Shown here in pieces: positions 2,624-50,900 of a DNA stretch of 64,000 nt. The stretch is taken from assembly GCA_002269645.1 (NCBI GenBank), contig NIVC01000059.1:868001-932000 (forward strand), written 5' to 3'. The position numbers and the translations under genes were made by a program. The stretch comes from Macrostomum lignano. Taxonomy: Eukaryota. The first letter of the stretch is position 1. Each line of letters starts with the position of its first letter. The notes under the pieces are model-generated. The model made no database searches. It had not been told where the DNA came from and was given only the letters and a program-made list of their open reading frames with translations.

Positions 2624-2668
2624 CAAGGACGACTTAAGTAGACTTAACTACTTAACTACTCGTCCTTG
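2624..2668. mobile_element. 45-bp remnant of P-type transposon termini (CAAGGAC...GTCCTTG), probable excision footprint
   Basis: Left arm caaggacgacttaagta; right arm reverse-complements to caaggacgagtagttaagta; filler of short local repeats. No matching 8-bp TSD (aagtctac vs cctagggc). Confidence 0.55.
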
Positions 2669-8662: not shown

Positions 8663-9333
8663 ATGGCAGCGGCAGTCGCTTCAGCCAATGGCGATCAGAA
8701 ACTGTTGGAATTCGATCACATCTACCAGGAGATTCGCGGCATGATGTACCCTGGCAAGCTGCGCCTCCGCCAGGCCGATATCTACTTTAAGAATGAGAAA
8801 ACTGGCCGCATTGATCACTACAGCTCCTCGGATATTGAGCAGGTGCACTGGATCATCCGGGCCAGGGGCTTCTGCCTCAAGTTCCTGCTCGGCGACCTCA
8901 TCTACCGCTATGACGGATTTCGGGAGGCCGATTTAGATAAGCTGAGCGCCTTTGCCAGGGCCAACTGGCAGGTTGAGGTGAGGCGTCTGTGTCTGTCCTA
9001 CTGTCTGTTTGACTGTCTGTATGTCTGACTGTCTGACTGTCTGTATGTCTGACTGTCTGTCTGACTGTCTGTCTGACTGTCTGACTGTCTGTCTGTATGT
9101 CTGACTGTCTGTCTGACTGTCTGTCTGACTGTCTGACTGTCTGTCTGTATGTCTGACTGTCTGTCTGACTGTCTGTCTGACTGTCTGTCTGTATGTCTGA
9201 CTGTCTGTCTGACTGACTGTCTGTCTGACTGTCTGTCTGACTGTCTGTCTGTATGTCTGACTGTCTGTCTGACTGTCTGTCTGACTGTCTGTCTGTCTGT
9301 CTGTATGTCTGACTGTCTGTCTGACTGTCTACC

Positions 9334-9384
<51 letters not shown>

Positions 9385-12300
9385 TTTTCGTCTGTCCGTC
9401 TCTATTACTCAAGTCACTCTATCTGTGTCTATGCATCTATCTGTATATATCGATAGGTATGATCTCAAATATAAGTAAGTTGATAAACCCATTGATTTCC
9501 TGATTACTGCAAGCCATCCCACATTCCCACACACTCGTCACTCGCGCCTCCTGTGTCGCAGATCGAAAAGAAGGACCTGGCCTACAAAGGCTGGAACTGG
9601 GGCCAGTTGAACTTTGTTAAAAATGCCATGGAGCTGGAGGTGTCGGGCCACACCGCATTCGAGCTGCCGCTGAACAACGTGGCCAACGTGAGCACCGGAA
9701 AGCAGGAGGTCACACTGGAGTTCCATCAGAATGACGATGCTGAGGTTTGCGTTTGATTTCTGGGTTTTTGACATTGTGGTTGTTTTTGGGATGCTGGTGT
9801 TTTTGGTATTCGAGTTTCCTAGCTGGGATCTGGGACTTTCTAATTTGGGATCAGTGAGTTTCTAATTTGGGATCTGTGAGTTTCTAATTTGGGATCTGTG
9901 AGTTTCCAAGCTGGGATCTGTGAGTTTCCAAGCTGGGATCTGTGAGTTTCCAAGCTGGGATCTGTGAGTTTCCAAGCTGGGATCTGTGAGTTTCCAAGTT
10001 GGGATCCGTGAGTTTCCAAGTTGGGATCTGTGAGTTTGCAGGTTGGGATCTGTGAGTTTGCAGGTTGGGATCTGTGAGTTTGCAGGTTGGGATCTGTGAG
10101 TTTGCAGGTTGGGATCTGTGAGTTTACAAGTTGGGATCTGTGAGTTTCCAAGTTGGGATCCGTGAAGTTTGCAAGTTGGGATCCGTGAAGTTTGCAAGTT
10201 GGGATCTGTGAGTTTCCAAGTTGGGATCCTTGAAGTTTCCAAGTTGGGATCTGTGAGTTTCCAAGCTGTGATCAGTGGGGTTCTAATTTGGGATCTGTGA
10301 AATAGTTGTGTTTTCAGGCACCCGTTCGCAGGATAGTTCCAATTTCTTCAGGGATAGAGATTGACCCCCAGACGGCCCCTGTCCCCGCCCCCGCAGGTGT
10401 GCCTAATGGAGATGCGCTTCCACATTGGCGAGCGCAGCGAACTGCAGTGCGAGGAGGTGGCCAAGCGAGTCATGGACAAGGCGGACATCATCCAGCTCAC
10501 CGGAGATGCGCTCTGCGAATTCAAGGAGCTCTACTGCGTGCAACCGCGCGGCCGTTACGACTTCCGCTTCTATCCAACTTTCCTGCACATGCACGGCAAA
10601 ACCTTTGATTATAAAATACCAATCAGCACCATCTATCGGATGTTTGTCCTGCCGCACGCTGACGGCCGGCAGAACTTCCTGGTGCTGGGCCTGGAGCCGC
10701 CCATTAAGCACGGCCAGACCCGCTATCACTTTCTCATACTGCTGTTCGATGTTGAAATTGAGACGTCTGTGGAATTGCGCTGCTCCGACGAGGAACTGCA
10801 GGCTAAATATGGTGGCAAACTGCAGAAGGAGATGTCGGGCAAAGAGTTTGAGGTGAGTAGCTTAACTATCATACTTCGGTAACCAATTAAAAAATCGATA
10901 TCTGGTTATCAGTCATCGATATTTAATTATCATAGATCGATATCTGGTTATCAGTAATCGATATTTAATTATCATAGATCGATATCTGGTTATCAGTAAT
11001 CGATATTTAATTATCATAGATCGATATCTGGTTATCAGTAATCGATATTTAATTATCATAGATCGATATCTGGTTATCAGTAATCGATATTTAATTATCA
11101 TAAATCGATATCTGGTTATCAGTAATCGATATTTAATTATCATAAATTGATATCTGGTTATGAGTAATCGATATTTACTTATAAAAAATCGATATCTATT
11201 CCTCTAAAGTCGGTAGTTGATTAATTATAGTTGATTAATAGTTGATTATTAATAGTTGATTAATAGTTGATTAATTATAGTTGATTATTTATAGTTGATT
11301 AATAGTTGATTAATTATAGTTGATTAATAGTTGAATATTTATAGTTGATTAATAGTTGATTAATTATAGTTGATTAATAGTTGATTATTAATAGTTGATT
11401 AATAGTTGATTAATTATAGTTGATTATTTATAGTTGATTAATAGTTGATTAATTATAGTTGATTAATAGTTGATTATTAATAGTTGATTAATAGTTGATT
11501 AATTATAGTTGATTATTTATAGTTGATTAATAGTTGATTAATTATAGTTGATTAATAGTTGATTAATTATAGTTGATTAATAGTTGATTATTAATAGTTG
11601 ATTAATAGTTGATTAATTATAGTTGATTATTTATAGTTGATTAATAGTTGATTAATTATAGTTGATTAATAGTTGAATATTTATAGTTGATTAATAGTTG
11701 ATTAATTATAGTTGATTAATAGTTAATTATTTATAGTTGATTAATAGTTGATTAATTATAGTTGATTAATAGTTGATTAATTATAGTTGATTAATAGTTG
11801 ATTATTTATAGTTGATTAATAGTTGATTAATTATAGTTAATTAATAGTTGATTAATTATAGTTGATTAATAGTTGATTATTTATAGTTGATTAATAGTTG
11901 ATTATTTATAGTTGATTAATAGTTGATTAATTATAGTTGATTAATAGTTGATTATTTATAGTTGATTAATAGTTGATTATTTATAGTTGATTAATAGTTG
12001 ATTAATTATAGTTGATTAATAGTTGATTAATTATAGTTGATTAATAGTTGATTATTTATAGTTGATTAATAGTTGATTATTTATAGTTGATTAATAGTTG
12101 ATTAATTATAGTTGATTAATAGTTGATTAATTATAGTTGATTAATAGTTGATTAATTATAGTTGATTAATAGTTGATTAATTATAGTTGATTAATAGTTG
12201 ATTATTTATAGTTGATTAATAGTTGATTATTTCAATTAGGCATTAAAAGTAAATACCAAATTCAGTGAGGACCACACGCACAAACTGCACTACTAATGAG

Positions 12301-14121
12301 TAGTCAATCATCAATAATTGCCGCAGGTAATCTCCCGCCTATGCCGTGTGCTAGTCAACCGTAAAATCACCGTGCCCGGCTATTTCCGATCAAAGTCCAA
12401 CAATCACTACATCAGCTGCGGCTACAAGGCCAACACCGGGTTCCTCTACCCGCTAGACAGAGGCTTCATCTTCGTGCCCAAGCCTCCGATGCATGTCCGC
12501 TTTGAAGAGATCTCCTCTGTACAGTTCAGCCGCGGCACCGCCTCAGTTCGCAGTTTCGACTTCGAAATCAACACCAAAGCCGGGGTGACTTACACGTTTA
12601 ATAGCGTTGAGAAAGACGAGTACAGCCATCTGTACAAGTTTGTGGAGGACAAGCAGCTGCCAGTGAAGAATATGGGCGAAGAGGACACCACTGGCAAGCT
12701 GGAGGCCTGGGAGAGCAGCGAGGCTGAGTCGGACGGTGACGACGTGTACATGAAGAGGGTCAAGGCTGAGGGCAAGGTGAGTCTTGTGGGGTGATATTCT
12801 TTGAGAGATTTCCCAGATGAGATTTCCCAGAAAAGATTTCCCAGATGAGATTTCCCAGATGAGATTTCCCAGAAAAGGTTTCCCAGATGGAATTTCCCAG
12901 AAAAGATTTCCCAGAAAAGGTTTCCCAGATGGAATTTCCCAGAAAAGATTTCCCAGAAAAGATTTCCCAGATGAGATTTCCCAGATGGAATTTCCCAGAA
13001 AAGATTTCCCAGATGAGATTTCCCAGATGAGATTTCTCAGGTGAGATTTAGGATGAGATTGTCATTTGTCACGAGATTTAGGGTGAGATTTTCTAGGATG
13101 AGATATCTCAAGATAGCATCGGCAGTGTCTCATATCCCATCCCATCCTCGCCCAGGAGCGCACAGCCGGCTCTGCCAACACCTCCGGCGGCGGCGGAGGC
13201 GAATCAGATGACGACTCCGAGGACGAAGACTTTTTGCCACCGGATGCTTCCGGCTCGGAAGTGGAAGAAGAATACGACACCGACGCCGATCCCTCGGAGT
13301 TCTCTTCCGACACCGACTACAGCGACGAGGAGGCGCGCAAGAAAAAGAAGCGTCGCCTAGCGAAGACAGTGCCGGAGGAGGGCTTCGGCGACTATACGGA
13401 GCAGAAGAAGAAGAAAGCCAAGCAAAAGGAGGCGGCCGCCAGCAAGACGAAGGTGTCGCGTAAGGATCGCAACGCACCGAAACGGCCCGCGTCGGCCTAT
13501 TTCCTGTTCCTTGAAGACGAACGACCGAAGATCAAAGCCGATCAGCCGGATCTGCGAGTGACAGAAATCGGCCGCGTGGCCGGCGAGAGGTGGGCGAAAT
13601 TGGACGAGACTAAAAAGAAGGCCTACCAGGAGAAGGCGGAAGAGTTGAAAAGCAAATACCAGGCCGAGCTGGCCGAGTACCAGGCCAAGCTGGAGCGGGG
13701 CGAAGTCAAGCCCGACATTCAGGAGAAACGGAAGCCCGCCGGCGGTGGCGGAGGCGGCGGTGGAGGCGGCGGCGGCGGCGGCGAGAAGTCCGGAGCGTCG
13801 GCGTCAGCGGCCGGCTCCGGCGCCAACTACAAATCTGCCGAATTCATCAACGACAGCGACGTGTCCTCCGTGTCCTCCTCTAGCGACGGTGGCGATGACG
13901 CCGAAGTCTCCAAAGATGAGGAGGAAGAGGACGAGAAGAAATCGACAAAACAGAAGAAGCAGACAAAAAAAGACGACGCCGCTAGTAGCAAAAAGAAGAA
14001 GACTTCTGATAAGAAATCTAAGCCGGAACAGAAAAAGAAGGACAAGAAAAAGAAGAAAGAATCGAGCAGTAGCGAAGAAGAGGAAGAGGAGGAGAGCGAC
14101 CTGAGCAGCGATTCCGAATAA
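8663..14121 (+). CDS. SSRP1: FACT complex subunit SSRP1, 789 aa; exons 8663-8977, 9562-9744, 10397-10852, 12327-12776, 13156-14121
   Basis: SSRP1 motifs (KGWNWG, TLEFHQND, QPRGRYD, HGKTFDYKIP, GQTRYHFL, GFLYPLDRGFIFVPKPP), acidic region and HMG box (DRNAPKRPASAYFLF). All four introns are GT-AG phase 0 and the total of 2370 nt is in frame. Confidence 0.96.
8990..9390. repeat. (CTGT/CTGA)n microsatellite in SSRP1 intron 1
   Basis: Direct reading. Confidence 0.93.
9830..10300. repeat. 22-bp minisatellite (agtttccaagctgggatctgtg)n in SSRP1 intron 2
   Basis: Unit spacing 22 nt (9901 to 9923). Confidence 0.93.
10893..11195. repeat. 42-bp minisatellite (atcgatatctggttatcagtaatcgatatttaattatcatag)n in SSRP1 intron 3
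   Basis: Six to seven near-identical units; source of the MIIKYRLLITRYRS pseudo-ORF. Confidence 0.93.
11215..12232. repeat. AT-rich composite 11/14-bp array (tagttgattaa / tagttgattaatta / tagttgattattta) in SSRP1 intron 3
   Basis: Direct reading. Confidence 0.93.
12803..13110. repeat. 14-bp minisatellite (gatgagatttccca / gaaaagatttccca) in SSRP1 intron 4
   Basis: Direct reading. Confidence 0.9.
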
Positions 14122-17183: not shown

Positions 17184-18866
17184 ATGGCGACCACCCAATC
17201 AGTTCAATGCGCGCCTCGAAAGGTGCTAATTGGAGTTGACAGAAGTGAGCACAGCGAACGTGCGCTGAGATTTTATGCGCGACACCTGCGCAGGCCGATG
17301 GACCGGCTGGTGTTCGTGAATATCAGCGAGCCGCCTGAGATGGCTATCGGACCTGCGACTCTGGAGAGGAACAAGGTGAGGCTGGAGAGGTGAACAGACT
17401 GCCGCTCTACTTTAACTAATAATTATGGATTGCTAATCTAGACAACATCAGTAAACTATACTGGATCGCTAATCTAGCCAACATCGATAAACTATGCTGG
17501 ATTGCTAATCTAGCCAACATCAATAGACTATAGTCGATTGCTAATCTAGTCAACATCGATAAACTATACTGGATTGCTAATCTAGTCAACATCAATAAAC
17601 TAAAGTCGATTGCTAATCTAGTCAACATCAATAAACTATACTGGATTGCTAATCTAGTCAACATCAATAAACTATAGTCGATTGCTAATCTAGTCAACAT
17701 CAATAAACTATACTGGATTGCTAATCTAGTCAACATCAATAAACTATAGTCGATTGCTAATCTAGTCAACATCAATAAACTATATTGGATTGCTAATCTA
17801 GTCAACATCAATAAACTATACTGGATTGCTAATCTAATCAACATCGATAAACTATATTGGATTGCTAATCTAGTCAACATCAATAAACTATAGTCGATTG
17901 CTAATCTAGTCAACATCAATAAACTATACTGGATTGCTAATCTAGTCAACATCAATAAACTATATTGGATTGCTAATCTAGTCAACATCAATAAACTATA
18001 GTGGATTGCTAATCTAGTCAACATCGATAAACTATATTGGATTGCTAATCTAGTCAACATCAATAAACTATAGTCGATTGCTAATCTAGTCAACATCAAT
18101 AAACTATACTGGATTGCTAATCTAGTCAACATCAATAAACTATACTGAATTGCTAATCTAGTCAACATCAATAAACTATACTGGATTGCTAATCTAGTCA
18201 ACATCAATAAACTATAGTGGATTGCTAATCTAGTCAACATCAATAAACTATTGTGGATTGCTAATCTAGTCAACTTCAATAAACTATAGTGGATTGCTAA
18301 TCTAGTCAGCATCAATAAACTATTGTGGATTGCTAATCTAGTCAGCATCAATAAACTATTGTGGATTGCTAATCTAGTCAGCATCAATAAACTATAGTGG
18401 ATTGCTAATCTAGCCAACATCGATAAAACATAGTGGATTGCTAATCTAGTCAAAATCAATAAACTATCCACAGGACTACTGCCGGTCCCTGGATTTCACT
18501 CTCTACGAGGCCAAACGCCTGGCAGACGACGTTCGTCAGCTCTGCCGAGACCTGGGCATTCTCGACGACACACACGACTCTCACGACGTGGTCGGTGGGG
18601 TCCGTTTCCTGGAAAGGGTCGGACACGAGGGACCGGGCCAGGCCATAGTTGAGACGGCTCGTTGCGAGGCCGTCCAGTTGATCGTGCTGGGCGCCAGAGG
18701 ACTCGGCGCAGTCAAGCGAGCCCTGCTGGGGTCAGTCAGCGACTTTGTGCTGCACCATGCGCACCTGCCTGTTGTGGTGGTGCCGCCTGCGGCTCCGCAG
18801 CCGGACATCTCGGCGACTGCCGGGTCAGCAGCCGCGGCTGCCAAGCTGGCGGAATATTCAAACTGA
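17184..18866 (+). CDS. Universal stress protein (UspA domain), 194 aa; exons 17184-17375 and 18474-18866
   Basis: RKVLIGVDRSEHSERAL N-terminal strand and LIVLGARGLGAVKRALLGSVSDFVLHHAHLPVVVVP (G-2x-G-9x-GS ATP-binding signature). Phase-0 GT-AG intron keeps frame. Confidence 0.92.
17427..18470. repeat. 36-bp minisatellite (about 29 units) filling the USP intron
   Basis: Unit spacing 36 nt (17581 to 17617); source of the 351-aa LMLTRLAIQYSL pseudo-ORF. Confidence 0.95.
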
Positions 18867-18899
18867 TTGGAGTCTGATTTAGCAGTGCATTTGGACACT

Positions 18900-19260
18900 G
18901 CGTTTGACGTGTGTTTTTCATGTGTTCTTCGTGTGTTGGTTATGTGTTTGGTGTGTTTGATGTGATTTTCATGTGTTTTATGTGCTTTTCATGTGTATTG
19001 TATTTTTCGTGTGTTTTATGTGTGTCTCAAGCGTTTGATGTTATTTTCATGTGTTTGATGTGATTTTCATGTGTTTGATGTGATTTGATGTGTTAGATGT
19101 GATTGATGTGTTTGATGTGATTTAATGTGATTTGATGCGCTTTTTTTGTTTGATGTGATTTTTTTGTATTATGTGATTTTTAGAGGTTTTTAAAGCGTTT
19201 AAAGCTTACCTAAAGTATTTTAATGTGGTTTTAATATTTCTTCATGTACTTTTAATGTAT
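18900..19260. repeat. TG/T-rich low-complexity tract (atgtgttt / tgatgtg) after the USP stop
   Basis: Direct reading. Confidence 0.7.
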
Positions 19261-24110: not shown

Positions 24111-24546
24111 GCTAGTAATTTAAATTATAAAAAAGCATCAGAAACAGCTTTTTAAACACAAGTTTTGACTCAGTTTTCCAATTCAAGCCCTCCAATAACA
24201 CTAATTGAGAGTGCTAAGGAGAATACGCGGGGCGCGGCTCAATTCAGACACTCTGTTTAAATTAGTGCTCCGCTAACAGCAGACATTCATAGATAGGCTT
24301 AGGAGAGAGAGAGAAGAGGAGAGAGAAGGGAGGCCAGGGGTTGGTAGCGCCGCCTGGGTTGGCCACCACGGTAGGCCATATTAAGAGCCTTATAGTTACA
24401 GCCAAGCTATCTGAGAAACTGCAGGTAATTAATACAGACTCGCTAAGATCTCTACTTAGAAAAGAAACCCAGCCCCCAAAGCAATTCAAGCAATTAGGCT
24501 ATCAAAGAGAAATCATTAGCATCAACAGCATCAGCATCCAGTGCAG

Positions 24547-26964
24547 ATGGCGCCCGCCATCCCGAGTTCGTGGCTCATCGGCGCTCTCCTGATTTCAACG
24601 GCAACCGCAGTAGCGGCAGGTCGCTACGATTCAGCCGAGAACTGCATCTGGGAGACGTGCTCGGTGGTGATCGTCAATCAGGCCAGTGACGAGACCGGAC
24701 AGCGGACTCGGTCGCTGGTGCTGCACCGGTGCGACCCCATGAGCCGCTACCCGGAGAAGTGCATCGTGCCCGAGGTGGTGAACGACCCGGACGGCGTGAC
24801 CAACTTCACAATGCGACGCGCCGGACTAACTGACATCGACGTCAGAGGCTTCTGCCAGTTCAAACGGCTGTCCGGTCTGGATCTGTCCGAGAATCGCATC
24901 GAGGAGTTTCGCTACCCAGCCGGGATGCCGCCCGGCTGCCTGTCGCGACTTCGTTGGCTCAGTCTGCGCGGCAACCGACTGCGCAGTGTGGATATTGCGC
25001 AATTTACTCGCTTCCCCGCGCTGGAGAAGATCGACCTGTCGGAGAACGGCCTGCTGGAGGCGGTCAACATCAGCCAGCTGACGCCGTACACCCGCTTGAG
25101 CGCCATCATCGCGCAGAAGTGCCGCATCAAGCGGGTGGACATCTCGCTAGTCCGCCTGCCGAGTCTGCAGGATGTGGATCTGAACTACAACCAGCTGTCC
25201 GAGCTCACCAACCGGCTCAACTGGAGCTGGTCAGTGCGCAAAGTTCGCTCAATTGAAGAGGAGCGGAACCGCAGGAAGACCCGGGATCCGTACTATTACG
25301 CCAGGCTGTCGGTGCAGATGGTGCAGAATCAGTTCGGCTCCAGCGCGTTCGGCCGGCGCCGACTCTGGGGCCTGCCGGTGCCCGACCTTCTCGACGCCGC
25401 CGATTCAACCAGCCCCGACGACGCCGTGGTCAACGAGCTCAAACGGTATCGCGACGCGTTCCAGTCGTTTCTGTACCTGGACCACGTCGGCTCCACCGTG
25501 TCCTGCGATTGCCGGCTGTTCCACGCGTGGAACTACCTGCGCCGGGTCTACGCCGACCCGTTGGAGTTCTCCAAACGGAACGCCCTGTCCATCGCCGAGT
25601 GGGTCGACCTGCCCTGCGAAACGTCCACCGGATTTGTCGGTCCGAAAACCATCGCCAGCCTCGAGGCCGAGGACCTCGTCTGCTCTCACCTGGACGGCTG
25701 CCCATCGAAGTGCAACTGCACCGAACAAGTCTCGCCTTCGGTGCTGACTGTCGACTGCCAAGGTCGACAGCTCCGTGCGATGCCGGACCGGCTGCCGGAG
25801 AGCGTGCACCCGGTGCGTTATGCTCTGCTGCTGGGCGGCAACAGCATCAGCGAACTGCGCGCTCTGCCGCCGAACCAGGCTCAGCTGGTGCAGCGGCTCG
25901 ATCTCAGCGACAACTGGCTGAGCAGCGAGACTGAATTCGCGCCTCTGAGCGCCTATCCTCAAGTGCACTCGGTGAACCTCAGCCGCAACTGGCTACTGAC
26001 CGAGCTGCCGTCCAGTCTGTTAGCCAATGCCACCAGCCGTTTTCCTAAAGCCTCGCTGCACCTGTCAGCTGGTCAGCTGGTCTGCCATTGCGGCCTTCTG
26101 AAGCCCGATCAGGTCACCCCGATGCGCTGGCTGCTGGCCAACTACCGTCAGCTGCGCTGCCGTGTGGCTCCGGAACAATCCGCCTCTGCTGTCGGTTGGT
26201 CCAGCCGGCGCCCACTGACTGCGCGCGGCGGCACCGTCCACGCCGAGGCGCTGTACCTGGCCGAGTTCCACCACAGGTTCTGCCTGACGGTGCCGCAGCA
26301 GGCCGTGCAGAGCACCGCGAATCCGACAATTTCTGATCAGCCACCTCCGGTGAACTCGGCCGCCAGTTCCAACGCTGTACTGTACATCATAGTTGTCCTG
26401 GTAGCTGCAGTGCTCATTGTGCTCATCTTTGTTTTACTCTGCTTGTTCAAATGCAAGCGAAAGCAGCGCAACTCCCAGCCACAGCAGCAGCAGCAGCAGC
26501 AGCAGCTGTGCAACAGTGCTCAGTTCGCTCCAACCTACGACGTTGCCAACCCGTCAATGCGGTACGTCAGCAGCTGCAGCGTCGGCCAGAGGATCTACGA
26601 GTCCAGCCTGTCGCCTGTCACCAAACCGCTGTTGGGCTCCGTCGCTGTCGACTATCCGATGTCGTCGCCGATTATCGGTGGCAGCGGCGGCGGTCCAGGC
26701 GACAATGTCAACAACAGCATCAACGACGACGACGCTAATAGCAGCGATTTTAGCAGCGGCGATCTGAGCGACACCGAATCTGCTCAACCAGCCTCCAACA
26801 GTCCGTACCAGACGGTGCGGCAGATGCTGGCGGTCGACCTGCCGCCGCCGCTGCCGCCGAGGCCCTCCCCGTTGGGTGTCAGCTACCAGCAGGGCCAGCA
26901 GCACCGGCAGCAGAGGATGACACGAGTCACCGTTGGACTGCAGGGCAGCGGCACCAATGTGTGA
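24547..26964 (+). CDS. Single-exon type I membrane LRR receptor with Toll-like (multiple cysteine cluster) ectodomain and no TIR domain, 805 aa
   Basis: Signal peptide (WLIGALLISTATAVAA), LxxLxLxxNxL repeats, LRRCT (SCDCRL...DLPC), LRRNT (CPSKCNC...VDCQGRQL), second LRR block and LRRCT (LVCHCGL...LRC), TM helix VLYIIVVLVAAVLIVLIFVLLCLF, low-complexity tail ending GTNV. Confidence 0.88.
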   Translation: MAPAIPSSWLIGALLISTATAVAAGRYDSAENCIWETCSVVIVNQASDETGQRTRSLVLHRCDPMSRYPEKCIVPEVVNDPDGVTNFTMRRAGLTDIDVRGFCQFKRLSGLDLSENRIEEFRYPAGMPPGCLSRLRWLSLRGNRLRSVDIAQFTRFPALEKIDLSENGLLEAVNISQLTPYTRLSAIIAQKCRIKRVDISLVRLPSLQDVDLNYNQLSELTNRLNWSWSVRKVRSIEEERNRRKTRDPYYYARLSVQMVQNQFGSSAFGRRRLWGLPVPDLLDAADSTSPDDAVVNELKRYRDAFQSFLYLDHVGSTVSCDCRLFHAWNYLRRVYADPLEFSKRNALSIAEWVDLPCETSTGFVGPKTIASLEAEDLVCSHLDGCPSKCNCTEQVSPSVLTVDCQGRQLRAMPDRLPESVHPVRYALLLGGNSISELRALPPNQAQLVQRLDLSDNWLSSETEFAPLSAYPQVHSVNLSRNWLLTELPSSLLANATSRFPKASLHLSAGQLVCHCGLLKPDQVTPMRWLLANYRQLRCRVAPEQSASAVGWSSRRPLTARGGTVHAEALYLAEFHHRFCLTVPQQAVQSTANPTISDQPPPVNSAASSNAVLYIIVVLVAAVLIVLIFVLLCLFKCKRKQRNSQPQQQQQQQQLCNSAQFAPTYDVANPSMRYVSSCSVGQRIYESSLSPVTKPLLGSVAVDYPMSSPIIGGSGGGPGDNVNNSINDDDANSSDFSSGDLSDTESAQPASNSPYQTVRQMLAVDLPPPLPPRPSPLGVSYQQGQQHRQQRMTRVTVGLQGSGTNV

Positions 26965-27151: not shown

Positions 27152-27879
27152 GCGAGCATTGCTGTTTTTCATTGCACCGGTCACGTGACCTGATTTATTT
27201 TTACTGTCTCTCCAAGTTGTTGTGAAACTTCGGCACCAAAGCTTATTGATTGCATTTGTAGCGTCCTGCACTAAGCTTTGCAAACCTCTTGACTAATTTA
27301 GTACATATACTATTTTTTAACTACACATAAATGTACTTTTCTGCCATTCTACTTGTAAATATATAACATCAGGTGTGTTGTCCATTGTCAGTCTTGATCA
27401 ATTCTGGTATTTTTTCCTCCTAGAAATTAAATAAATGGACAAAATAAAGTAAAATTTTAAGTCAATCTTAGCGGCCGTGTTAATCTGTATGTACTGGACT
27501 ATACATACGTTCGAGTATTTAATCTCAAGGCAATACTGAGTGGCCTCGCCTCGTATGTTTACATCAGCTGGAACAGGTCGGATCAGTTCTCTCAGGAATC
27601 TTGAACTGTTTCAATATTGTTTGTTTCTCTCTAAGCCTTTGCTCGCTATGTATGCTCTAAGAACATGTTTAAGTAAGTCTAGGAAAGAATCTTTAACCAA
27701 AGTACGGTAGCGTTGGTCCTCCTTACCCTGAGTAAATTGCCCCACGAAAGGAAATTCCTAAATGCAATTGCCATTATAACTGGTGGTCTACCGCAGCCTT
27801 TTAATTATTACATTTAGACCGTGTTGAAAAAAGTTAAAGATTGCAAATGCAAGTAAATAGAAAAAGTCCAAATCTGAGG

Positions 27880-28212
27880 CCTCAGACTACTCAATTCACA
27901 GGCCATAGACTTATTCAATTCACAGGCCATAGACTACTCAATTCACAGGCCATAGACTATTCAATTCCCAGGCCATTTGACTACTCAATTCCCAGGCTAT
28001 AGACTACTCAATTCACAGGCCATAGACTACTCAATTCCCAGGCCATAGACTACTCAATTCACAGGCCATAGACTACTCAATTCACAGGCCATTTGACTAC
28101 TCAATTCCCAGGCCACAGACTACTCAATTCCCAGGCCATAGACTACTCAATTCCCAGGCCATAGACTACCCAATTCACAGGCCATAGACTATTCAATTCC
28201 CAGGCCATAGAC
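27880..28212. repeat. 23-bp minisatellite (ggccatagactactcaattc[a/c]ca)n
   Basis: Unit spacing 23 nt (27925 to 27948). Confidence 0.92.
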
Positions 28213-28276
28213 ACCATCTCATTTCCAAAGCAATAGGTTACCTACTTTACCTGTGTCTTCCGACACTGTGTCTTCA

Positions 28277-28321
28277 CAAGGACGACTAAAGTAACGTATA
28301 TATCTACTTAAGTAGTCCTTG
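28277..28321. mobile_element. 45-bp P-type excision footprint or minimal element flanked by perfect 8-bp TSD TGTCTTCA
   Basis: tgtcttca | caaggacgactaaagta acgtatatatc tacttaagtagtccttg | tgtcttca. The 17-bp arms are inverted repeats (15/17) and share CAAGGAC.ACT with the TIR at 43120. Confidence 0.8.
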
Positions 28322-28674
28322 TGTCTTCAGAGTAGATAACTGGTTAGAACCTTCTCTAGGAGCTAGGCGAAGTGAAGAAATAATTACTGAAGTGGTTTGA
28401 GCAGGAAAGAAATGCTATAAAACTTTGATACCTGCTTTCGACTTAAGAAACTAAAAAGATACTACGTGACATCCGGACTCTATGACGATTTTTCGGACAA
28501 GCTCAATCGATCATTACCAAGAGTCTGGGCGCGCTGTGACATATTTTTAATGAGGATTAATAAGTTCTCTATAAGTTGTACCAGAGTGGCAGAAGGATAG
28601 GAGAGTTATGATTTAATTGCATTAGTAGAAGACGGACAAGTTATACTAGGCGGCATGTTTAAGGGTGGGGTGGG

Positions 28675-29150
28675 AGAGGTGGCAAAGCGGGTGAGAGGGA
28701 GGGTGACAAAGCGGTTAAGAGGGAGGGTGACAAAGCGGGTGAGAGAGGGAGGGTAACAAAGCGAGTGAGAGGGAGGGTCACAAAGCGGGTGAGAGAGGGA
28801 GGGTGACAAAGCGGGTGAGAGAGGGAGGGTGACAAAGCGGGTGAGAGAGGGAGGGTAACAAAGCGAGTGAGAGGGAGGGTGACAAAGCGGGTGAGAGGGA
28901 GGGTGACAAAGCGGTTAAGAGGGAGGGTGACAAAGCGGGTGAGAGGGAGGGTGACAAAGCGGTTAAGAGGGAGGGTGACAAAGCGGGTGAGAAAGAGGGT
29001 GACAAAGCGGGTGAGAGGGAGGGTGACAAAGCGGTTAAGAGGGAGGGTGGCAAAGCGGGTGAGAGAGGGAGGGTGACAAAGCGGGTGAGAGAGGGAGGGT
29101 GACAAAGCGGGAGAGAGGGAGGGTGGCAAAGCAGTGAGAGGGAGGTGGTC
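28675..29150. repeat. 24/26-bp purine-rich minisatellite (gtgacaaagcgggtgagagggagg)n
   Basis: Direct reading. Confidence 0.92.
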
Positions 29151-34361: not shown

Positions 34362-41545
<7,184 letters not shown>

Positions 41546-43037: not shown

Positions 43038-44387
43038 AGGGAAAGTTGATATAATTTTGGGTAAATGGCAATAATTTAAGAATGAATATATTCATTAAGG
43101 CTAAATTCCTCATCAACTACAAGGACCACTAGAAGTTACCGTTGTATCAGGACGCAACACTCGTAAATATTGTAAAATTATTTGAAGGCCCGCTTGTTTA
43201 CGTGTATTTATCGGTACTTGCCTTCAAAAAAGCATCTACTCGACTTAAGTCGACTGTTTTAAAGAAGCATACACTACATTTGAGCCTCAGAAGCTTAATA
43301 TAATATGTGTATTTATAGTTTATTTAGGCTGTAATCTAGATATTTTGAGTAATTATATCATTAAATGCAACTCGTTTTAATATTTCCTAAGGTTTTATGC
43401 AGACAGCAGATGCTGCTAGTCATAGTACTGAGAATTAAACAAAGCTTGAGAAAAGGTCAAAGGATCAGAAGGGCTTCTAACTAACTTACTATCAACCAGA
43501 AAGTAATTTAACCAGTAGGTCTATATTATTTTATAACTTATAAGCTTAGCCTTTACACTTTAGCTAGCTATGACAGGCTAGGCCTATCATATGACATTAG
43601 GCCTATAATACTGAAACTCCAACAGCTACTAGGCCTATGCCTAGGCCTACCATGATTATTAGGCCTAGTTATTATTATTATTAATATTATTATTAGGCCT
43701 ATTATTATTATTATTATTACTGAAGACTAGGACTAATTCATGTACTCATGCTTGATGTTAGTATCAGACAAGTTAAATGATAGTTTATTTGTTTTTAATG
43801 TATCCAACCAATAAGATGTTGCTTTAGCTAACTAACCTATGCTTTTTATTCTTTTGTCCTTTTGTAGCAGACATATTTTAGCATATTAAAAGTTGGTTTC
43901 CCACTAGAAACAACAAGGCTAAAGTTTATTATACTGGCTTTTCAATTTCTTTAGGCCTATTTATTTTTGTGTTGAAAACACTATTTTTTCCAATTTTTAT
44001 CAGTGTAATAATATTGTAATGTATTACTGTCTTGAAGACATTTGCAGCACCTATTTTTAATGTCAAATAGCAGCTTTTCAATTGTGTTACAATTTTTTTA
44101 AAGGCCTTTATTTATTAATATTGGTGTTTTTTTAGAAGAAAAAATATTTCTGCTACTTTTTTATTTGTTTTTCTTTTATTACCAGTTTGTGTTCACTTTC
44201 AAATCTGTACGTTAATATAATACACAGTTATTCACTTATAAAAACCCTTTTTGGCTTTCATTTGTTTTTACATAGTTTATGTTTTGGGTCTAATATTTTA
44301 AAATGTAAAGTGAGATAACTGAAATGTTTCAATTTTTTGGTTTATAAATCTAACAATTTCAGTGTACTCACAAAAAATTATCAAACC

Positions 44388-47315
44388 ATGCCCATGAAAT
44401 GTTGCATACCATCTTGTAGAAGTAACTATCGCAATGAAGAGAAGGTAGCTATATTTGGCTTTCCTAAAGATGAGGCTGAGCATTGCCGATGGATTAATGC
44501 ATTGCCATCGTCTATTAAGGTGAATAAAATGACCTTTTAATGAGTTACTTTATTCTTTAAAAGTAAATAATTGAGATCAATATAATTTTTGAATAATTAA
44601 AATGTATAGTAAAAATAATTAACTTTCTAAAGTTTATATATAAATTGTAGAATGTCTCTAAGTTCATGGGCATTTGCCGAAAGCATTGGGAAGATGATGC
44701 CCCCATGGTAAAAGTCAAGCGGTTCACAAGACCTAGGGACCCACCTTCTATTTTTCAATTTGCTAAGAAAAGTGATATGCGCCAAACATATCCAAGTAAG
44801 TTAACAATATGCCCTATCATACAGCATGTTATATAACTTATAGCTCAGGTAAAGTTGGATTGCCTTTTATAATGTGTTGTTGTTTGTAATTCAAAAATAT
44901 TTTTAGAGAAGTCAAGGCAGGCTGTTAAAAGAGGCATTTCCCTGTCACAGCGTGGTCAAGAACCAGATCAAATGCCTGCATTTAACAAAGCCGATCGAAT
45001 CTGTTCGTGGAATGCTTTCCAAGTTGCTGCTTTAGCTCTTCCCTTCTTAGTTGGCTGGCTTGTGCAAGTTTCGGATTCGAATGTTTTGTTCTTGACCATA
45101 TTTGAACGTGCAGTTGAATTCTATATCTGTGTTAATAGTGACTTCACTGTTGAAGCCTATCGACAGAACAGTGTTGTCAAGGTAACTGACCTCCTAGGAT
45201 TTCAATGGAAACTAGAACGCTTTAGTCAACTTGAAGCTATTGTTAATAGGGTCAAACAGGCCCCATTGACAATTAGTGATGAGATCAAGTCTAGTGTGGC
45301 AACCATTCGAAAGTTACCATGTAGCTCCAAGCAACTGTTTCTTCTTCGTCAACTGGAATTGTCCTTATCATCAAATGGGCACTATTATAATTCATCAGAC
45401 ATTTTAACAGCCATGAAGATCTTCCTATCTGGCACTAATGCTTATCGGTCAGCAAGGCACCTTATGACTCTACCGCATGCTACAACTCTAAAGCGTCATC
45501 TTGGTGGTCTTGGTAATGTTGGAACAGACTTAGATTGTAAGACCATTGTGAGGACACATTTTGGCCAACTGACTCCGTCACAGAAGTTGTGTACTGTTAT
45601 TTTTGATGAAGTATACGTTTTACCATCAGCTCGTTTCCGAGGTGGACATACAGTTGGCTATGCTGAGGATGTACCAACACAATTGGCTCGTACTATCCTA
45701 GCCTTAATGATAAAACCATTCATGGGAGCCCAATCATTTGTGGCTAGGCTGATTCCTGTTTATAGTTTAAAACCCAACTTCTTGTTCCAACAAATTGTAA
45801 AACTAATTAGGGTTATTCATCAATGCAATGGGCAGGTTGTAAGTCTTATTTGTGACAATCATTTCATCAACCGTATCTGCTACCAGAAGTTTCAGTTTGA
45901 CAACATGGATGCACCCTGGAAGGCAATTAACCCAGTAGATCAAAGCCTACCTTTGTTTCTATTATATGACACAGTTCATCTATTGAAAAACATTCGCAAT
46001 AATTGGTATACTCAAGGCTCAAAGATTATTGACTTTCAACTTTTACCAGAAGGGCCTATTTGTCAAGCTAATTGGAATGATATTATAGATATTGAGCAGA
46101 AATCACAGCTTCATGTTGTTCGACCTACAACACTTAGTCCACAATCATGCCATCCATCTCCATTGGAACGTCAGAAGGTATCTTTAGTTCTTCAAGTTTT
46201 TAATGAAAAGACAATTGCTGCTCTTCAACTTCATGGGTTTTATGGTACAGCCACTTTTATAGATTTTATCCTTAAGTTTTGGAAAGTGGTTAATGTAAAA
46301 TCAACAACATCTCATATGCAGCTGCATGATGATACACGTAGTCCAATTTTCTCTGAAGAGTCAAGCAATCTTAAGTTACTAAGTATGTTTGCCAAAGTAT
46401 TAGAACGGATGCCTGGAGGTCGAGGACCTGGACGTTTACGATCGCTTACTTCGGAAACTCGCAAGGCTGCTATACAGACATCAAAAGGGCTGGTTGAACT
46501 GAGCAGATATTTACTAAAAGACTGTAAATTTTCCTATGTGTTATTAGGTAAGAATAAGTGTATACCAGTAAGTAGTGAAAGTTGATTTAGATAAAAGTAC
46601 CTTTTCAAAGTAAGTGAGTCATTTAATTTTTATTTATACACATTCTCTAGGTGAGCTTCAATCAGACAGACTTGAAGGAGAATTTTCTATTTACAGACAA
46701 GGACATGGGGGCTGCTATTATATATCAGTTGAGCAGATAATGCTCTCAGCCCGCCTACGAAGAATGCAACTGTATGCAGACCTGCAAATTGATGCACCAT
46801 CTATGAACTGCCAAGCACAAGACAGCTGTTGTACTGGCACAATGTCATTTGAAGAGATTGAGTTAATTGATAATTTGCCAGGCCAAATTGAAGAGGTATA
46901 ACTGGATGAAAGAGTAACTCTGTATTATATCTGCGGCTATATTTCAATGAAGGAGTCCTTAGAAGTGCCTGAAGTATTTCCTGCTCAAACTGTACAAGCA
47001 CCAGATAGTGAGTTTACTAACCTTTTATCTAGAGGAAAATTGCAACATCCTCCTGAATGGCTAATTGTCTATGCATCAATGTGCTACTAACTCTTTGGTA
47101 TGATGTCACTGAAGTGTGCCAGCCATACAATTCGCCTTTTTCTATATACTTTTGAGTCACTTGTTGACTTTGATATTCAAAAGGATCAACTATCATCTAT
47201 TGCTCGCCGGCTTGCAAATACTTTTTTCAAAGGCCTAGTGCGTAAGTCATCAGAGATACCTCGGCATACTTTCAATGCCAATGGACGTAGACTACGTAAA
47301 CTACAACATGAATGA
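44388..47315 (+). pseudogene. THAP/P-element transposase, about 860 codons; exons 44388-44519, 44651-44795, 44907-46547, 46651-47315; in-frame TAA at 46899 and 47088
   Basis: THAP C2CH (CCIPSC...FPK...W...ICRKHW...PPSIF), RNase H DDE candidates FDEV, ICDN and QSDRLEGEF, insertion-domain motif YDTVHLLKNIRNNW, C-terminal LYYICGY / SEF..LLSRGKL.HP / RRLANTFFK read through the two stops in one frame. Confidence 0.88.
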
Positions 47316-47509
47316 TTTGCTACATTCTTTATTATCACACTCTGGCTAGTTGACCAATTGCTGGCATACTCAGATGTATTTCTTGAAGCCCATGAATTTT
47401 TTATATACTTTGGGGATAGCTATAATTTATTGCAAGCTTTTGTATCAATTTAAGTTTGCTTAAGTTAGTTGAGTCTATTAAAAAGTTTGAAAAATTGAAT
47501 TTAAAAGTT

Positions 47510-47930
47510 TGAACAGTTTTGTTCATATTTTTTGAGGCATCTATTTAATTACTTACAGGATAACATTCTACTGTTTGTTAGAAAGTTGTTGACAGTTTTG
47601 TCAAATGTACAGTTTTGCTCATATTTTTGTAGACATCTATTTAATTACTTACAGGCTAACATTCTACTGTTTGTTAGAAAATTGTTGACAGTTTTGTCAA
47701 ATGTACAGTTTTGCTCATATTTTTGTAGGCATCTATTTAATTACTTACAGGATAACATTCTACTGTTTGTTAGAAAGTTGTTGACAGTTTTGTCAAATGT
47801 ACAGTTTTGTTCATATTTTTGTAGACATCTATTTAATTACTTACAGGCTAACATTCTACTGTTTGTTAGAAAATTGTTGACAGTTTTGTCAAATGTACAG
47901 TTTTGTTCATAATTTTGTAGGCATCTATTA
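47510..47930. repeat. 96-bp tandem repeat (about 4.3 units) in the 3' region of the P element
   Basis: Unit spacing 96 nt (47535 to 47631). Confidence 0.93.
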
Positions 47931-50900
47931 CCCTTTACATGCAAAAATTGTTTTTAAAAGTCATTAATAAGTCTGTTGATTATTTTTTTTGTATTCTAGT
48001 TACCTGATTGTTGATTTTATAGCTAAGTGAAGTTAAATGCTTCAAAATTGGTTGAGCTATGCTGTTTAAGTAAATCATTTACCAATACCACTTTAGAACA
48101 AGACACTCATTTTTGCTATACTGAATAGAATTATAGAATTAGATTAGATTTGATTTGGATTAGATTAATTATATCATTTCACTAAGCTGAAGTTATATGT
48201 TCAAAACTGAAGTCAAGGGTAAAGGAGTACTATTTTTTACTATACATTAGAATGACAAATAGGAAAAAAACATTTTAGTCTAAAGACAAATATAGTTTTA
48301 CACAGTGTTATAGACAATGTGTAAACAATGTGTAAGATTTATTTGTTTGTTTAACTAGCATTCCTAGCAACATGGCTTATAGTTTGTTATAGTTTTTTGT
48401 TGTCAATACAGCAATATATTAGAGTATATAAATTCACAATTGAATATACTTTGAAGTCTAAATGTGTTATTCTCTTTCCTTATTTATTAGGCCTAAGACA
48501 ATTCTGTATAGCCGGATGTATACCATTTATAGACTTATCTAAAGCTATTGTTCAAACTATCTTTATACAAGATTGTAAACCTTATCTTGTTTTTCATCAG
48601 TGCAATAAGTAGGTTGTTAGTCTTGTCATTAACAATTATTTTATTAACCATATTGTTTACAAATGTTGCAGATTGACAGTTGAGATGTTTGTTTAGTTTA
48701 ACTACAGTTTCTTATTATCATTACCTTTATATCCATATTCAATGTACTTTAATTTGTTAGTTTGTCAGTTTCATGTTAGTTAAACCAGCTGTGATATTGA
48801 TGGTTTAAGCTTTGTTTCATACATATTAGGTTATAGAGAAAATGTATTCATTTACTCAAAACAAGGCTTATATTTTGTTGTTCATTGCAAAGCAGGTATT
48901 TATTAATCCCAAATTGGTTTCATTTCAGGTATGCCAAATCATCCAATCTAGATGTTCATCCATCAATGTCTGCTGAGCTAACATGGTGAAGTACTGTGAT
49001 TCATTATGCTTTGTGATTTTAAGAGATTTTTTAGACAGAATGACTTGATTGGTATGAAAGTTTAAGTTTAAAATACATTGGCTTATTGTTGCTTTTTGAC
49101 TTTGTTTTCTTATTTCGCATGTATTCTTTATGAAATTATAGGTTTTTATATCGAAATTGAACTTAAATACAAATAAAGTTGTGCTACTGTACAAGTTTTA
49201 TTTGACTCCTACTGTTCATTTGAACAGCAAAAGAAAGATTATGAATGTTGGAGTTCTTGTTGGGCAGGTGTGCCAAGATTTCAAAAATACTGCGCCTTTC
49301 TGATTTTTATAATACTGGTTTTTGATAGTGAAGTGACGCCTTTGCAGCCTACTGAACTCTGTACAGATTATCCGCTTTATAAAGCTTCCAACTACAGAGT
49401 ATGTTGTATGGTCTGCTACTTTATCGAGACTAGGAGGCAATAATTGAAGTTACTGAAACTTTATTCATTTTGTATGCAATGAAATATTGTGTATTGCTGT
49501 TACTTTACTGTACGCCCGCCGCTCCTACATGTAGATATAGCGCCAAACTTTGTTTTATGTTAAAGAGAACAAAATTTCGAGCAACCTGGCGAAAAAATAT
49601 CTTTCAAAGTGCAACCAGTCCGGAGTTATGAGCATTTAAAGTTAAGCTGCAATGCAAACAAGCGGGCCTTCAAATAATTTTGCAATATTTACGAGTGTTG
49701 CGTCCTGATATAACGGTAACTTCTAGTGGTCCTTGATCAACTATTTAGTACTATATCCATATTTTTAGGTGGGCATTTTTTGCAACTTACCTTGGCTAGG
49801 TGCTATGCCTATATAGATTAAACTATTTATTAACTTGTTAAGAACTACCTATTAGTGAATGAGCTATGAGCAGTGATATGCCATTTGCCTTGGACATAGC
49901 CATGAGACTACAACGATAAGCTAATGATAGATTTGTTGATAATTGCACCTCTAAGCTTGCTTAGAATGTCAAGTTCAGGTATTGAAAAACAAGGGGTTTT
50001 CTTTGAGAAGCCACCTAACACTAACATAGTTGCTAGATCTGGTTTAATAATAGTCAATATCTGATTACCAAATAGACAATCATTGACTAGCTTAAAATTT
50101 CCTATATAGGATATCCTACCAAAAAGCAAACTAGGGCACCAAAATGCCAGGCATAGACACCAAAGCACAGATACCAAAAAGCATGGAAACCCCTATAAAT
50201 ACACTAGCATATGCCCTGATTCTTTTTCACTTACTATTTCTTCAATTTAATTCTAAATTATAATTAGTCATTTATTATTTTTGCTATAATAAAACTAGTA
50301 GTTGTATTTTGCTAAACATTAATGAAAAATTATCTATAAAAATGCTAAAAATGACATATTAGAAATGAAAATCCAGTGAAAAGTTTAAAAGTCATGTCAT
50401 CTATAACTTAAAAAATTAGACCTTTTGTTGAGGAAAATGATCATAGTGCCTTTTTTATTAGAGGCGGGAGGTTGTGTGTACCCTGGCACATACATGGCTT
50501 ATTAGGCCCACTATTTAAGAGCAACATGAATGAATGATAATAGTACTAGATTGCAATAAAAAGTAACAATAACACTAACACATTTGGCAATTTGTTATTT
50601 TTAGTTTGACTAGGCCCTATTATTAGGCCTAATATTAGATCTATTTAAGTTTTAACCACTGATATTATATACTTTGCCTTTGGGCAATAAAACATTTAAA
50701 AGTCATAACCTTTGGCTTCAGCTAGGCCCTATTCTTATTAACTTTAAAATTTATCATTTTTTCAAATTTTATTAATAAAGATAAGTTAATTAAAGTTGCA
50801 ACTTGGCAACATTATTTTTCGATGGAGATTGAGCTTCTCCGACTTAATTACCCATGGTCATTGTCGAGGAAGTCCAGATACAACTACAATGCCAATGGCC

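What the first reader, a model, noticed from the sequence alone, without database searches (positions are those of the whole stretch)
28269..28329. Textbook P-element excision footprint outside Drosophila: 8-bp TSD + 17 bp TIR + filler + 17 bp TIR + TSD
Drosophila P transposase is known to cut with a 17-nt stagger, leaving up to 17 nt of each terminal repeat at the donor site. Here 17-bp inverted arms (15/17 identical) and an 11-bp AT filler lie between perfect TGTCTTCA duplications. The arms share CAAGGAC.ACT with the full-length P element at 43120 but are not identical, which implies a sister family. This is sequence evidence that the unusual 17-nt staggered-cut chemistry is conserved in a distant animal lineage and that such elements were active in its germ line.
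Basis: partly seen in the sequence, partly recalled or inferred. Interest (0 to 1): 0.8.

Follow-up and report, generated by a model that had tools for sequence, protein, structure and literature searches.

The report
P-type transposon excision scar, 45 bp
A 45-bp inverted-repeat remnant flanked by a perfect 8-bp duplication is most likely the scar left when a P-family "cut-and-paste" transposon jumped out of this animal genome; this is expected biology, and it hints at, but does not prove, that the long staggered cut known from the fruit-fly P element is shared by distant relatives.

Summary
It is unique in the window and absent from shuffles.

The arms are termini of a P-superfamily clade. 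They share 10 of 11 terminal positions with the 6.6-kb P-like element at 43120-49735. They are closer still (16/17) to a Macrostomum lignano P element.

The layout matches published Drosophila P excision junctions (TSD + 17 + insertion + 17 + TSD). I found three more such mini-palindromes:
- window 2624-2668, 45 bp
- a metagenome contig, 44 bp
- an ENA contig, 32 bp, with a perfect 7-bp TSD, nested in a P element

Their interiors are unrelated. Nothing between 46 bp and 3 kb turned up in 173 kb. That favours repair scars over a MITE family.

The "17-nt chemistry" inference is not established:
- The right arm matches its nearest relatives for 19 nt.
- The "filler" matches positions 18-27 of the M. 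lignano left end at 8/10 (p 0.001-0.1, depending on the test).
- In relatives the two ends diverge from each other after 14-20 nt anyway.
- Two of the four minis lack TSDs.

Verdict: a real, probably genuine footprint and a new member of a known kind. The stagger length remains unresolved.

The parts
28269..28276 (.). Left copy of the 8-bp target-site duplication, TGTCTTCA
   Evidence: It is identical to 28322-28329. The chance of an 8/8 match at one site is about 1.5e-5.
28277..28293 (+). Left arm CAAGGACGACTAAAGTA, the terminus of a P-superfamily element
   Evidence: It matches the right arm at 15/17. It matches the M. lignano ends at 12-14/17 and the window's 43120 element at 12/17.
28294..28304 (.). 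Central 11 bp, ACGTATATATC. Either a junctional insertion or retained/copied inner part of the left terminal module.
   Evidence: It matches M. lignano left-end positions 18-27 (TCGTTTATAT) at 8/10 in register: p=0.001-0.003 a priori, p=0.06-0.11 conservative. It also resembles Full_R CCGTTATATC.
28305..28321 (-). Right arm, read on the minus strand as CAAGGACTACTTAAGTA. With 28303-28304 it reads CAAGGACTACTTAAGTAGA (19 nt).
   Evidence: It matches the M. lignano right end at 16/17, or 18/19 including the next two bases. It shares 18 of 19 nt with the left arm of the mini at 2624.
28322..28329 (.). Right copy of the target-site duplication, TGTCTTCA
2624..2668 (.). Second 45-bp mini-palindrome of the same terminus family: CAAGGACGACTTAAGTAG + ACTTAA + CTACTTAA[CTAC]TCGTCCTTG. 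It has no matching TSD. A degenerate extra arm copy abuts it at 2606-2623.
   Evidence: The interior is built from direct and inverted 6-8-nt copies of the arm. It is unrelated to the interior of the element at 28277.
43120..49735 (+). Structurally complete P-like element of a related family (6,616 bp). It has 80-nt TIRs and TSD ATCAACTA at 43112-19 / 49736-43. The transposase lies in about 3 exons (44388-44519, 44651-46579, 46647-47306) and carries two nonsense codons in the last exon (46899-46901, 47085-47087).
   Evidence: TIR/TSD; TNP-like RNase H; 53% identity to M. lignano THAP-type protein; exons and stops.

Best explanation
The most likely account is an in-situ excision scar.

Proposed sequence of events:
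1. A P-superfamily transposon inserted at TGTCTTCA and duplicated those 8 bp. It belonged to a family with termini CAAGGAC(G/T)ACT(T/A)AAGTAG..., closest to a Macrostomum lignano P element.
2. Its transposase later cut it out with a long stagger. Each donor flank kept a single-stranded tail made of the outer ~17-19 nt of the element.
3. The two non-complementary tails were joined by end joining, probably the polymerase-theta type. About 7-11 junctional nucleotides remain, either templated filler or a few bases copied from a sister copy of the element before joining.

Shown: the anatomy, the perfect TSD, homology of the arms to termini of transposase-encoding P-like elements, and recurrence of similar scars elsewhere.

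Inferred: that a full element once sat here, that the transposase rather than some other deletion process removed it, and the length of the stagger.
For: - The structure is unique in the window and absent from shuffles.
- The arms match clade termini: CAAGGACNACT at 43120/49735, and 16/17 or 18/19 identity to the M. lignano element's right end, which has a perfect 8-bp TSD TGAATAGG.
- The clade encodes THAP/TNP-like transposases.
- Published Drosophila P{wa} junctions have the same layout: TSD + CATGATGAAATAACATA + 3-49-nt templated insertion + TATGTTATTTCATCATG + TSD (PMC2895639).
- Three further mini-palindromes exist:
  - window 2624-2668, 45 bp
  - L001 490-533, 44 bp, arms 18/18
  - L014 9770-9801, 32 bp, arms 15/16, perfect 7-bp TSD GCATCAT, nested in a P element that itself has a 7-bp TSD
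- Their arms are conserved but their interiors are unrelated. In 2624 and L001 the interiors consist of short direct or inverted copies of arm sequence, which is the signature of templated end joining.
- Pairs of clade termini in the 173 kb scanned are either 32-45 bp or 3.3-6.6 kb apart, with none between 46 bp and 3 kb.
Against: - No occupied allele or parent element of the exact family was found, so prior occupancy is inferred.
- Two of the four minis (2624 and L001) lack a clean TSD, which a simple footprint should keep. L001 reads 5/7 as a 7-bp TSD.
- Three of the four are 44-45 bp, an odd coincidence for independent repair events.
- The 'filler' may be element-derived. That would require extra repair synthesis or a longer retention on the left side.
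- The sample is tiny, and L001 was ascertained with a size-limited pattern.
Confidence: 0.6

Rival explanations
1. It is a mobile mini-element: an ultra-short MITE made of just the two terminal modules. It transposed into TGTCTTCA as a 45-bp unit, mobilised in trans by a P-like transposase.
For: - It has a perfect TSD and intact termini.
- There is a second 45-bp and a third 44-bp structure with the same termini.
- A aligns along its full length (37/46 identical, one gap) to a 'virtual mini' made of the M. lignano left module (27 nt) plus right module (19 nt), so the constant length could reflect module lengths.
- The terminal motif AAGGACGAC resembles the inner AGGACGC(G/A)AC motif, so a binding site might be retained.
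Against: - The copies are not alike inside. A compared with the reverse complement of B is 18/19 identical in one arm but 14/26 in the rest. The interiors of A, B and L001 are unrelated.
- The L014 mini is 32 bp, not 45.
- It lacks everything inward of the inner motif. In Drosophila P, more than 100 bp per end including internal transposase sites is needed (own knowledge; site layout in PMC7776569).
- At 45 bp it is smaller than any MITE I know of. BuT5, the known P-associated MITE, is about 1 kb (PMC3698922).
Confidence: 0.2
2. It is an in-situ internal deletion not made by the transposase. Replication slippage, or processing of the hairpin formed by the long inverted repeats, removed everything between the two inner AGGACGC motifs of a resident element and left both complete terminal modules (about 27 + 19 nt).
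For: - The central 11 bp match the inner part of the left terminal module of relatives (8/10 with M. lignano; TATATC as in Full_R). The junction falls exactly where AGGACGC would start on both sides, with 1-2 nt of overlap.
- In relatives the two ends differ after 14-20 nt, which would by itself give ~17-nt arms.
Against: - The filler homology is only marginal after multiple-test correction (p 0.06-0.11).
- The L014 mini breaks inside the module, at 15-16 of 18 nt.
- The interiors of B and L001 look like templated junction insertions, not module sequence.
- I know of no mechanism that deletes precisely at the outer edge of an inverted motif pair.
Confidence: 0.13
3. It is a chance or functional hairpin, such as a small RNA or regulatory palindrome, unrelated to transposition.
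For: - It folds as a hairpin: DNA dG -9.2 kcal/mol, z = -4.3.
- Three bacterial genomes contain hairpins beginning CAAGGACNACTGA.
Against: - The perfect 8-bp TSD and the terminus identity to P-like elements are not expected of an unrelated hairpin.
- No Rfam family matches.
- The number of bacterial hits is close to the chance expectation (about 1 expected, 3 seen), and they share only the bases the pattern demanded.
Confidence: 0.03

Closest known systems
Drosophila melanogaster P-element excision footprints (for example the P{wa} repair junctions in Chan, Yu & McVey 2010, PMC2895639)
   Same: Both copies of the TSD are kept. About 17 nt of each terminus remain in inverted orientation. There is a short A/T-rich or templated insertion between them. 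The overall size is 35-50 bp.
   Different: - The terminal sequence is unrelated (CAAGGAC... versus CATGATG...).
- The host is a non-insect animal whose nearest transposase relative is from a flatworm.
- The retained length cannot be fixed at 17: it is 19 against the nearest relatives on one side, and possibly 26-28 on the other.
- The cleavage chemistry of the cognate transposase is untested.
Macrostomum lignano P-like element encoding BOX15_Mlig018626g1 (L002 8688-13931)
   Same: It has the same terminus family: its right end CACGGACTACTTAAGTAGA matches the finding's right arm at 18/19. It has an 8-bp TSD and the same terminal-module-plus-AGGACGC architecture. Its transposase is 53% identical to the one in the window.
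   Different: It is a full-length 5.2-kb element with a coding region. Position 3 is C rather than A. It is not the actual parent.
Zebrafish Pdre2 and its internally deleted copies (PMC10983969, PMC7776569)
   Same: They are P-superfamily elements outside insects, with 8-bp TSDs and non-autonomous derivatives. Excision by a THAP9-type transposase has been shown experimentally.
   Different: Pdre has 13-bp TIRs and deletion derivatives of hundreds of bp. No natural ~45-bp scars or stagger length are reported in the text I read.
BuT5, the MITE partner of a divergent P element in the Drosophila repleta group (PMC3698922)
   Same: It is a non-coding derivative sharing termini with a P transposon, with an 8-9-bp TSD.
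   Different: BuT5 is about 1 kb, multi-copy and homogeneous, and retains the THAP-binding sites. The structure here is 45 bp, and its relatives differ internally.

Membership tests
P superfamily DNA transposon (derivative of) | Termini homologous to those of elements that encode a THAP + TNP-like RNase H (P/THAP9-type) transposase | tested here: met
   The arms match the M. lignano element ends at 14-16/17, and match the 11-nt motif at 43120/49735. Those elements encode PF21787/PF05485 proteins.
P superfamily DNA transposon (derivative of) | Target-site duplication of 7-8 bp | tested here: met
   8/8 TGTCTTCA. Relatives have 8-bp TSDs (window, M. lignano) or 7-bp TSDs (L014, L016).
P superfamily DNA transposon (derivative of) | Own transposase gene | tested here: not met
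   The 45 bp have no coding capacity. It can only be a remnant or a non-autonomous derivative.
P-element excision footprint (Drosophila definition) | Both TSD copies retained, flanking inverted terminal fragments | tested here: met
   The format is as in PMC2895639.
P-element excision footprint (Drosophila definition) | Retained terminal fragments no longer than the staggered cut (17 nt in Drosophila) | tested here: inconclusive
   - Self-complementarity ends at 17.
- The right arm matches M. lignano and the mini at 2624 through 19 nt.
- Left positions 18-27 match the M. lignano left end at 8/10 (p 0.001-0.003; 0.06-0.11).
- The other minis have arms of 15-19 nt.
P-element excision footprint (Drosophila definition) | The site was previously occupied by a complete element (occupied allele or parent copy known) | not testable with these tools
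   The source genome is absent from the searchable collections: the best protein hits are 53-67% identical. There is no paralogous empty or occupied site in the window.
P-element excision footprint (Drosophila definition) | The cognate transposase makes a long staggered cut | not testable with these tools
   This needs biochemistry (cleavage-site mapping).
MITE | Many near-identical copies with different TSDs | tested here: not met
   Only 64 kb of the source genome plus 109 kb of relatives could be scanned. The one other copy in the window has an unrelated interior and no TSD. The sample is limited.
MITE | TIRs and a TSD of the superfamily | tested here: met

The most novel reading that the evidence does not exclude
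Natural excision scars in several unrelated invertebrate genomes all keep only about 15-19 nt of each P-type terminus, with nothing between 46 bp and 3 kb. The cases are this window (two), a metagenome animal contig, and an ENA contig with a nested scar. If this holds, the exceptionally long staggered cut of the Drosophila P transposase is an ancestral property of the whole P/THAP9 superfamily and can be read directly from genome sequence. A bolder variant is that the cut is placed next to the inner AGGACGC motif, which would give unequal tails (about 27 and 19 nt) at the two ends.
Probability: 0.3. Interest if true: 0.6.

Novelty: new member of a known kind. Interest (0 to 1): 0.4.

Why it matters
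The 17-nt staggered cleavage is the oddest feature of P transposition. In what I read it has been demonstrated only for the Drosophila enzyme (PMC7776569, PMC10983969). If scars like this one are common and show a sharp cap on retained arm length, the cut geometry of distant P/THAP9 transposases could be inferred from genomes alone. They would also date germ-line excision activity in a non-model animal. On its own, this single locus is an expected by-product of a known transposon superfamily that is already documented well outside Drosophila.

Tried and rejected
- **Source organism and more of its genome.** The transposase ORF and an SSRP1 exon have best hits of only 53% (M. lignano) and 60-67% (unnamed Logan contigs), so the genome is not in the collections. 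A third protein search with the M. lignano protein gave no further M. lignano loci.
- **Collection scans for paired arms.** Metagenomes gave one hit, L001. Viral contigs gave none. Bacterial genomes gave three hairpins that I judge to be chance.
- **Parent family.** Twelve contig look-ups on relatives gave ends for 9 elements but none with the exact termini.
- **Paralogous empty or occupied site in the window.** None found.
- **Known RNA family.** None.
- **Filler homology.** A global-alignment test was uninformative (p 0.07-0.15). The register-anchored tests give p 0.001-0.003 (single a-priori reference) or 0.06-0.11 (all references), so I treat the homology as suggestive only.
- **Abutted-ends junction.** Rejected. 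The ends face inward like a normal element, not outward.
- **Inner segment as a separate nested transposon.** Rejected. There is no duplication flanking the AGGACGC motifs.

Full report
**1. Observation**

The sequence is exactly as described:
- TGTCTTCA (28269-76)
- CAAGGACGACTAAAGTA (28277-93)
- ACGTATATATC (28294-304)
- TACTTAAGTAGTCCTTG (28305-21)
- TGTCTTCA (28322-29)

The arms are 15/17 complementary. A whole-window scan for any 17-nt inverted repeat (at least 15/17, spacer up to 60) flanked by a perfect 8-bp direct repeat finds only this site. Twenty locally shuffled windows gave none.

Two small qualifications apply. The direct repeat can be read as 10 bp because the right arm ends in TG. 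A third partial copy, TGTGTCTTCCGA, lies 15 bp upstream. Deleting 53 bp restores one copy, so the target-site-duplication reading holds.

**2. What the arms are**

CAAGGACNACT occurs without mismatch at only five places in the window: both arms here, the left arm of a second small palindrome at 2624 (whose right arm carries one mismatch), and both ends of a 6,616-bp element at 43120-49735.

That large element has these features:
- 80-nt TIRs at 98% identity and a perfect 8-bp TSD, ATCAACTA.
- A three-exon gene whose product matches TNP-like RNase H (Pfam, weak).
- 53% identity to a THAP-type protein of Macrostomum lignano, with about 100 further P/THAP9-like relatives.
- Two nonsense codons inside conserved sequence in its last exon, at 46899-46901 and 47085-47087. 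It is therefore structurally complete but probably not autonomous.

The host is an animal. The window carries SSRP1, LRR, HECT/WW and LTR-retrotransposon genes. The host is not represented in the protein collection.

**3. Architecture of the clade**

I fetched contigs for relatives and read their ends. All share a terminal module, CA(A/C)GGAC plus 11-22 nt, followed by an inner motif (C)AGGACGC or CGGACG that resembles the terminus itself.

Module lengths:
- 18-19 nt: L006, L010, L012, L014, and the M. lignano right end.
- 26-29 nt: the window element, L004, L005, and the M. lignano left end.

In three of five elements with both ends available, the left and right ends are identical for only 14-20 nt and then differ up to the inner motif (M. 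lignano 14, L005 17, L004 20). This recalls the unequal 9/21-bp spacing in Drosophila P (PMC7776569).

Genome-grade assemblies show perfect TSDs: 8 bp in the window and M. lignano, 7 bp in L014 and L016. Metagenome-assembled copies often show none.

The finding's arms are closest to the M. lignano element. The right arm is 16/17 identical, or 18/19 when extended, to its right end. The 'sister family' statement is therefore correct.

**4. More examples**

- **B, window 2624-2668, 45 bp.** CAAGGACGACTTAAGTAG + ACTTAA + CTACTTAA[CTAC]TCGTCCTTG. The arms are 18 nt with a small bulge. The interior is made of direct and inverted copies of arm sequence. A degenerate extra arm abuts it at 2606-2623. 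It has no TSD.
- **M, L001 490-533, an animal contig in a JGI metagenome, 44 bp.** The arms are 18/18. The interior AGCAGTCC contains a copy of the terminal AAGGACT. There is no 8-bp TSD, although the flanks match 5/7 if read as a 7-bp TSD.
- **N, L014 9770-9801, 32 bp.** CACGGACTACTAAAT G ATTTAGTAGTGGCGTG. The arms are 15-16 nt and the 7-bp TSD GCATCAT is perfect. It lies inside a full P-like element that itself has a 7-bp TSD, next to a diverged extra left end.

Comparing the finding (A) with the reverse complement of B, one arm is 18/19 identical but the remaining 26 nt are only 14/26. They are not copies of one 45-bp master.

In the 173 kb I could scan, pairs of clade termini are either 32-45 bp or 3.3-6.6 kb apart, with none between 46 bp and 3 kb. 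Leaving out M, which was found with a size-limited pattern, three of three being 45 bp or less would have probability of about 0.008 if sizes were uniform over 20-150 bp. This is my own arithmetic on a very small sample.

**5. Comparison with the textbook case**

The tables of Chan, Yu & McVey 2010 list Drosophila P{wa} excision junctions of the form acccagac-CATGATGAAATAACATA-[insertion]-TATGTTATTTCATCATG-acccagac. Insertions range from 3 to 49 nt and include TATACCG, TGTTATAAC and TAACATGAATAAC. They are often templated, in direct or inverted orientation, as imperfect 5-8-nt repeats (PMC2895639). The finding has this anatomy. The interiors of B and M look like such templated insertions.

**6. 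Where the interpretation overreaches**

- The number 17 is only where A's own two arms stop matching. A's right arm and B's left arm share 18 of 19 nt (CAAGGACNACTTAAGTAGA), and so does the M. lignano right end. Retention on that side is therefore probably at least 19 nt.
- A's 'filler' matches positions 18-27 of the M. lignano left end at 8/10 without any gap. It ends in TATATC like the window element's module. A as a whole aligns to M. lignano left module + right module at 37/46 with one gap.
- With M. lignano chosen beforehand as the closest relative, that match has p = 0.001-0.003. Allowing for 9 references, 3 offsets and 2 orientations gives p = 0.06-0.11. I treat it as suggestive only.
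- If the match is real, the left side keeps 26-28 nt. That could arise from about 10 nt of repair synthesis on a sister copy before joining (aborted gap repair), from a longer cut, or from a non-transposase deletion.
- Because the ends of relatives diverge after 14-20 nt, arms of about 17 nt would appear in any derivative that kept both modules.
- B and M lack clean TSDs, which neither a simple footprint nor a simple insertion predicts. Exchanged TSDs after ectopic recombination (as for BuT5, PMC3698922) or assembly chimerism in the metagenome contig are possible explanations, but neither was tested.

**7. Verdict**

| Explanation | Probability |
|---|---|
| In-situ excision scar of a P-superfamily element | about 0.6 |
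| Mobile 45-bp mini-element | about 0.2 |
| Non-transposase deletion leaving both terminal modules | about 0.13 |
| Unrelated hairpin | about 0.03 |

The data are consistent with a long stagger of roughly 15-19 nt in this clade, but they do not establish it and they do not fix it at 17.

P-like transposons with 7-8-bp TSDs are already known across animals and protists (PMC3698922, PMC7776569). Excision by a vertebrate THAP9 has been shown (PMC10983969). This is therefore a new member of a known kind. Its value is as a pointer to a genome-wide test of cut geometry.

Noticed in passing
L014:9770-9801 (ENA ERZ25766962 ctg16949): A 32-bp P-type mini-palindrome with a perfect 7-bp TSD, GCATCAT. It is nested inside a full P-like element (9223-13052, TSD CTATGCG), right after a diverged extra left end (9672-9769). 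It looks like a scar from a nested insertion and excision.
   Followed up: partly
window 43120-49735: The 'full-length' P-like element has near-perfect 80-nt TIRs, but its last exon carries two nonsense codons within conserved coding sequence (46899-46901 and 47085-47087). Two earlier stops (about 44834 and 44870) sit in a ~37-codon stretch absent from relatives, which is probably an intron.
   Followed up: yes
window 43120-43160, L002, L004-L006, L010, L012, L014: The clade-wide end architecture is a terminal CAAGGAC-type motif, a variable 11-22-nt spacer, then an inner repeat of a similar motif ((C)AGGACGC). The spacer often differs in length between the left and right ends (27 versus 19 nt in M. 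lignano). The inner motif is a candidate transposase-binding site.
   Followed up: partly
window 27877-28212 and 28672-29145 (and about 40 other arrays): The window is packed with minisatellite arrays (85 TRF rows). Examples are a 15-mer repeated 123 times at 53179-55026 and a 20-mer repeated 64 times at 36835-38119. The 23-bp array just upstream of the finding contains GACTACTCAA, 9/10 identical to the arm core GACTACTTAA. This may be chance.
   Followed up: no
window 43241-43252: A perfect 12-bp palindrome, CGACTTAAGTCG, lies inside the full element, 120 bp from its left end. It resembles the self-complementary core ACTTAAGT of the mini-element arms.
   Followed up: no
L007:4289-4329, L008:4535-4571, L009:3498-3534 (bacterial genome contigs): Three bacterial hairpins begin CAAGGACNACTGA... 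and end ...TCAGTNGTCCTTG (37-41 bp). About one hit was expected by chance for the pattern, so they are probably unrelated to P elements.
   Followed up: partly
L014:18264-18315; L014:6488-7217 and 18495-19218: There is a 52-bp palindrome with different termini (CAATGACGAGTCAGAAATAT...), and two elements of about 725 bp with CGCTGACTGCTAT termini. These may be scars or MITEs of other transposon families in the same contig.
   Followed up: no
window 10361-14121 (+), 24541-26964 (+), 36088-36819 (-), 59040-62675 (-): Host and mobile genes in the window: SSRP1-like exons (PH and HMG box), a single-exon LRR transmembrane protein, a HECT/WW ubiquitin-ligase exon, and an LTR-retrotransposon pol (RT, integrase).
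   Followed up: partly
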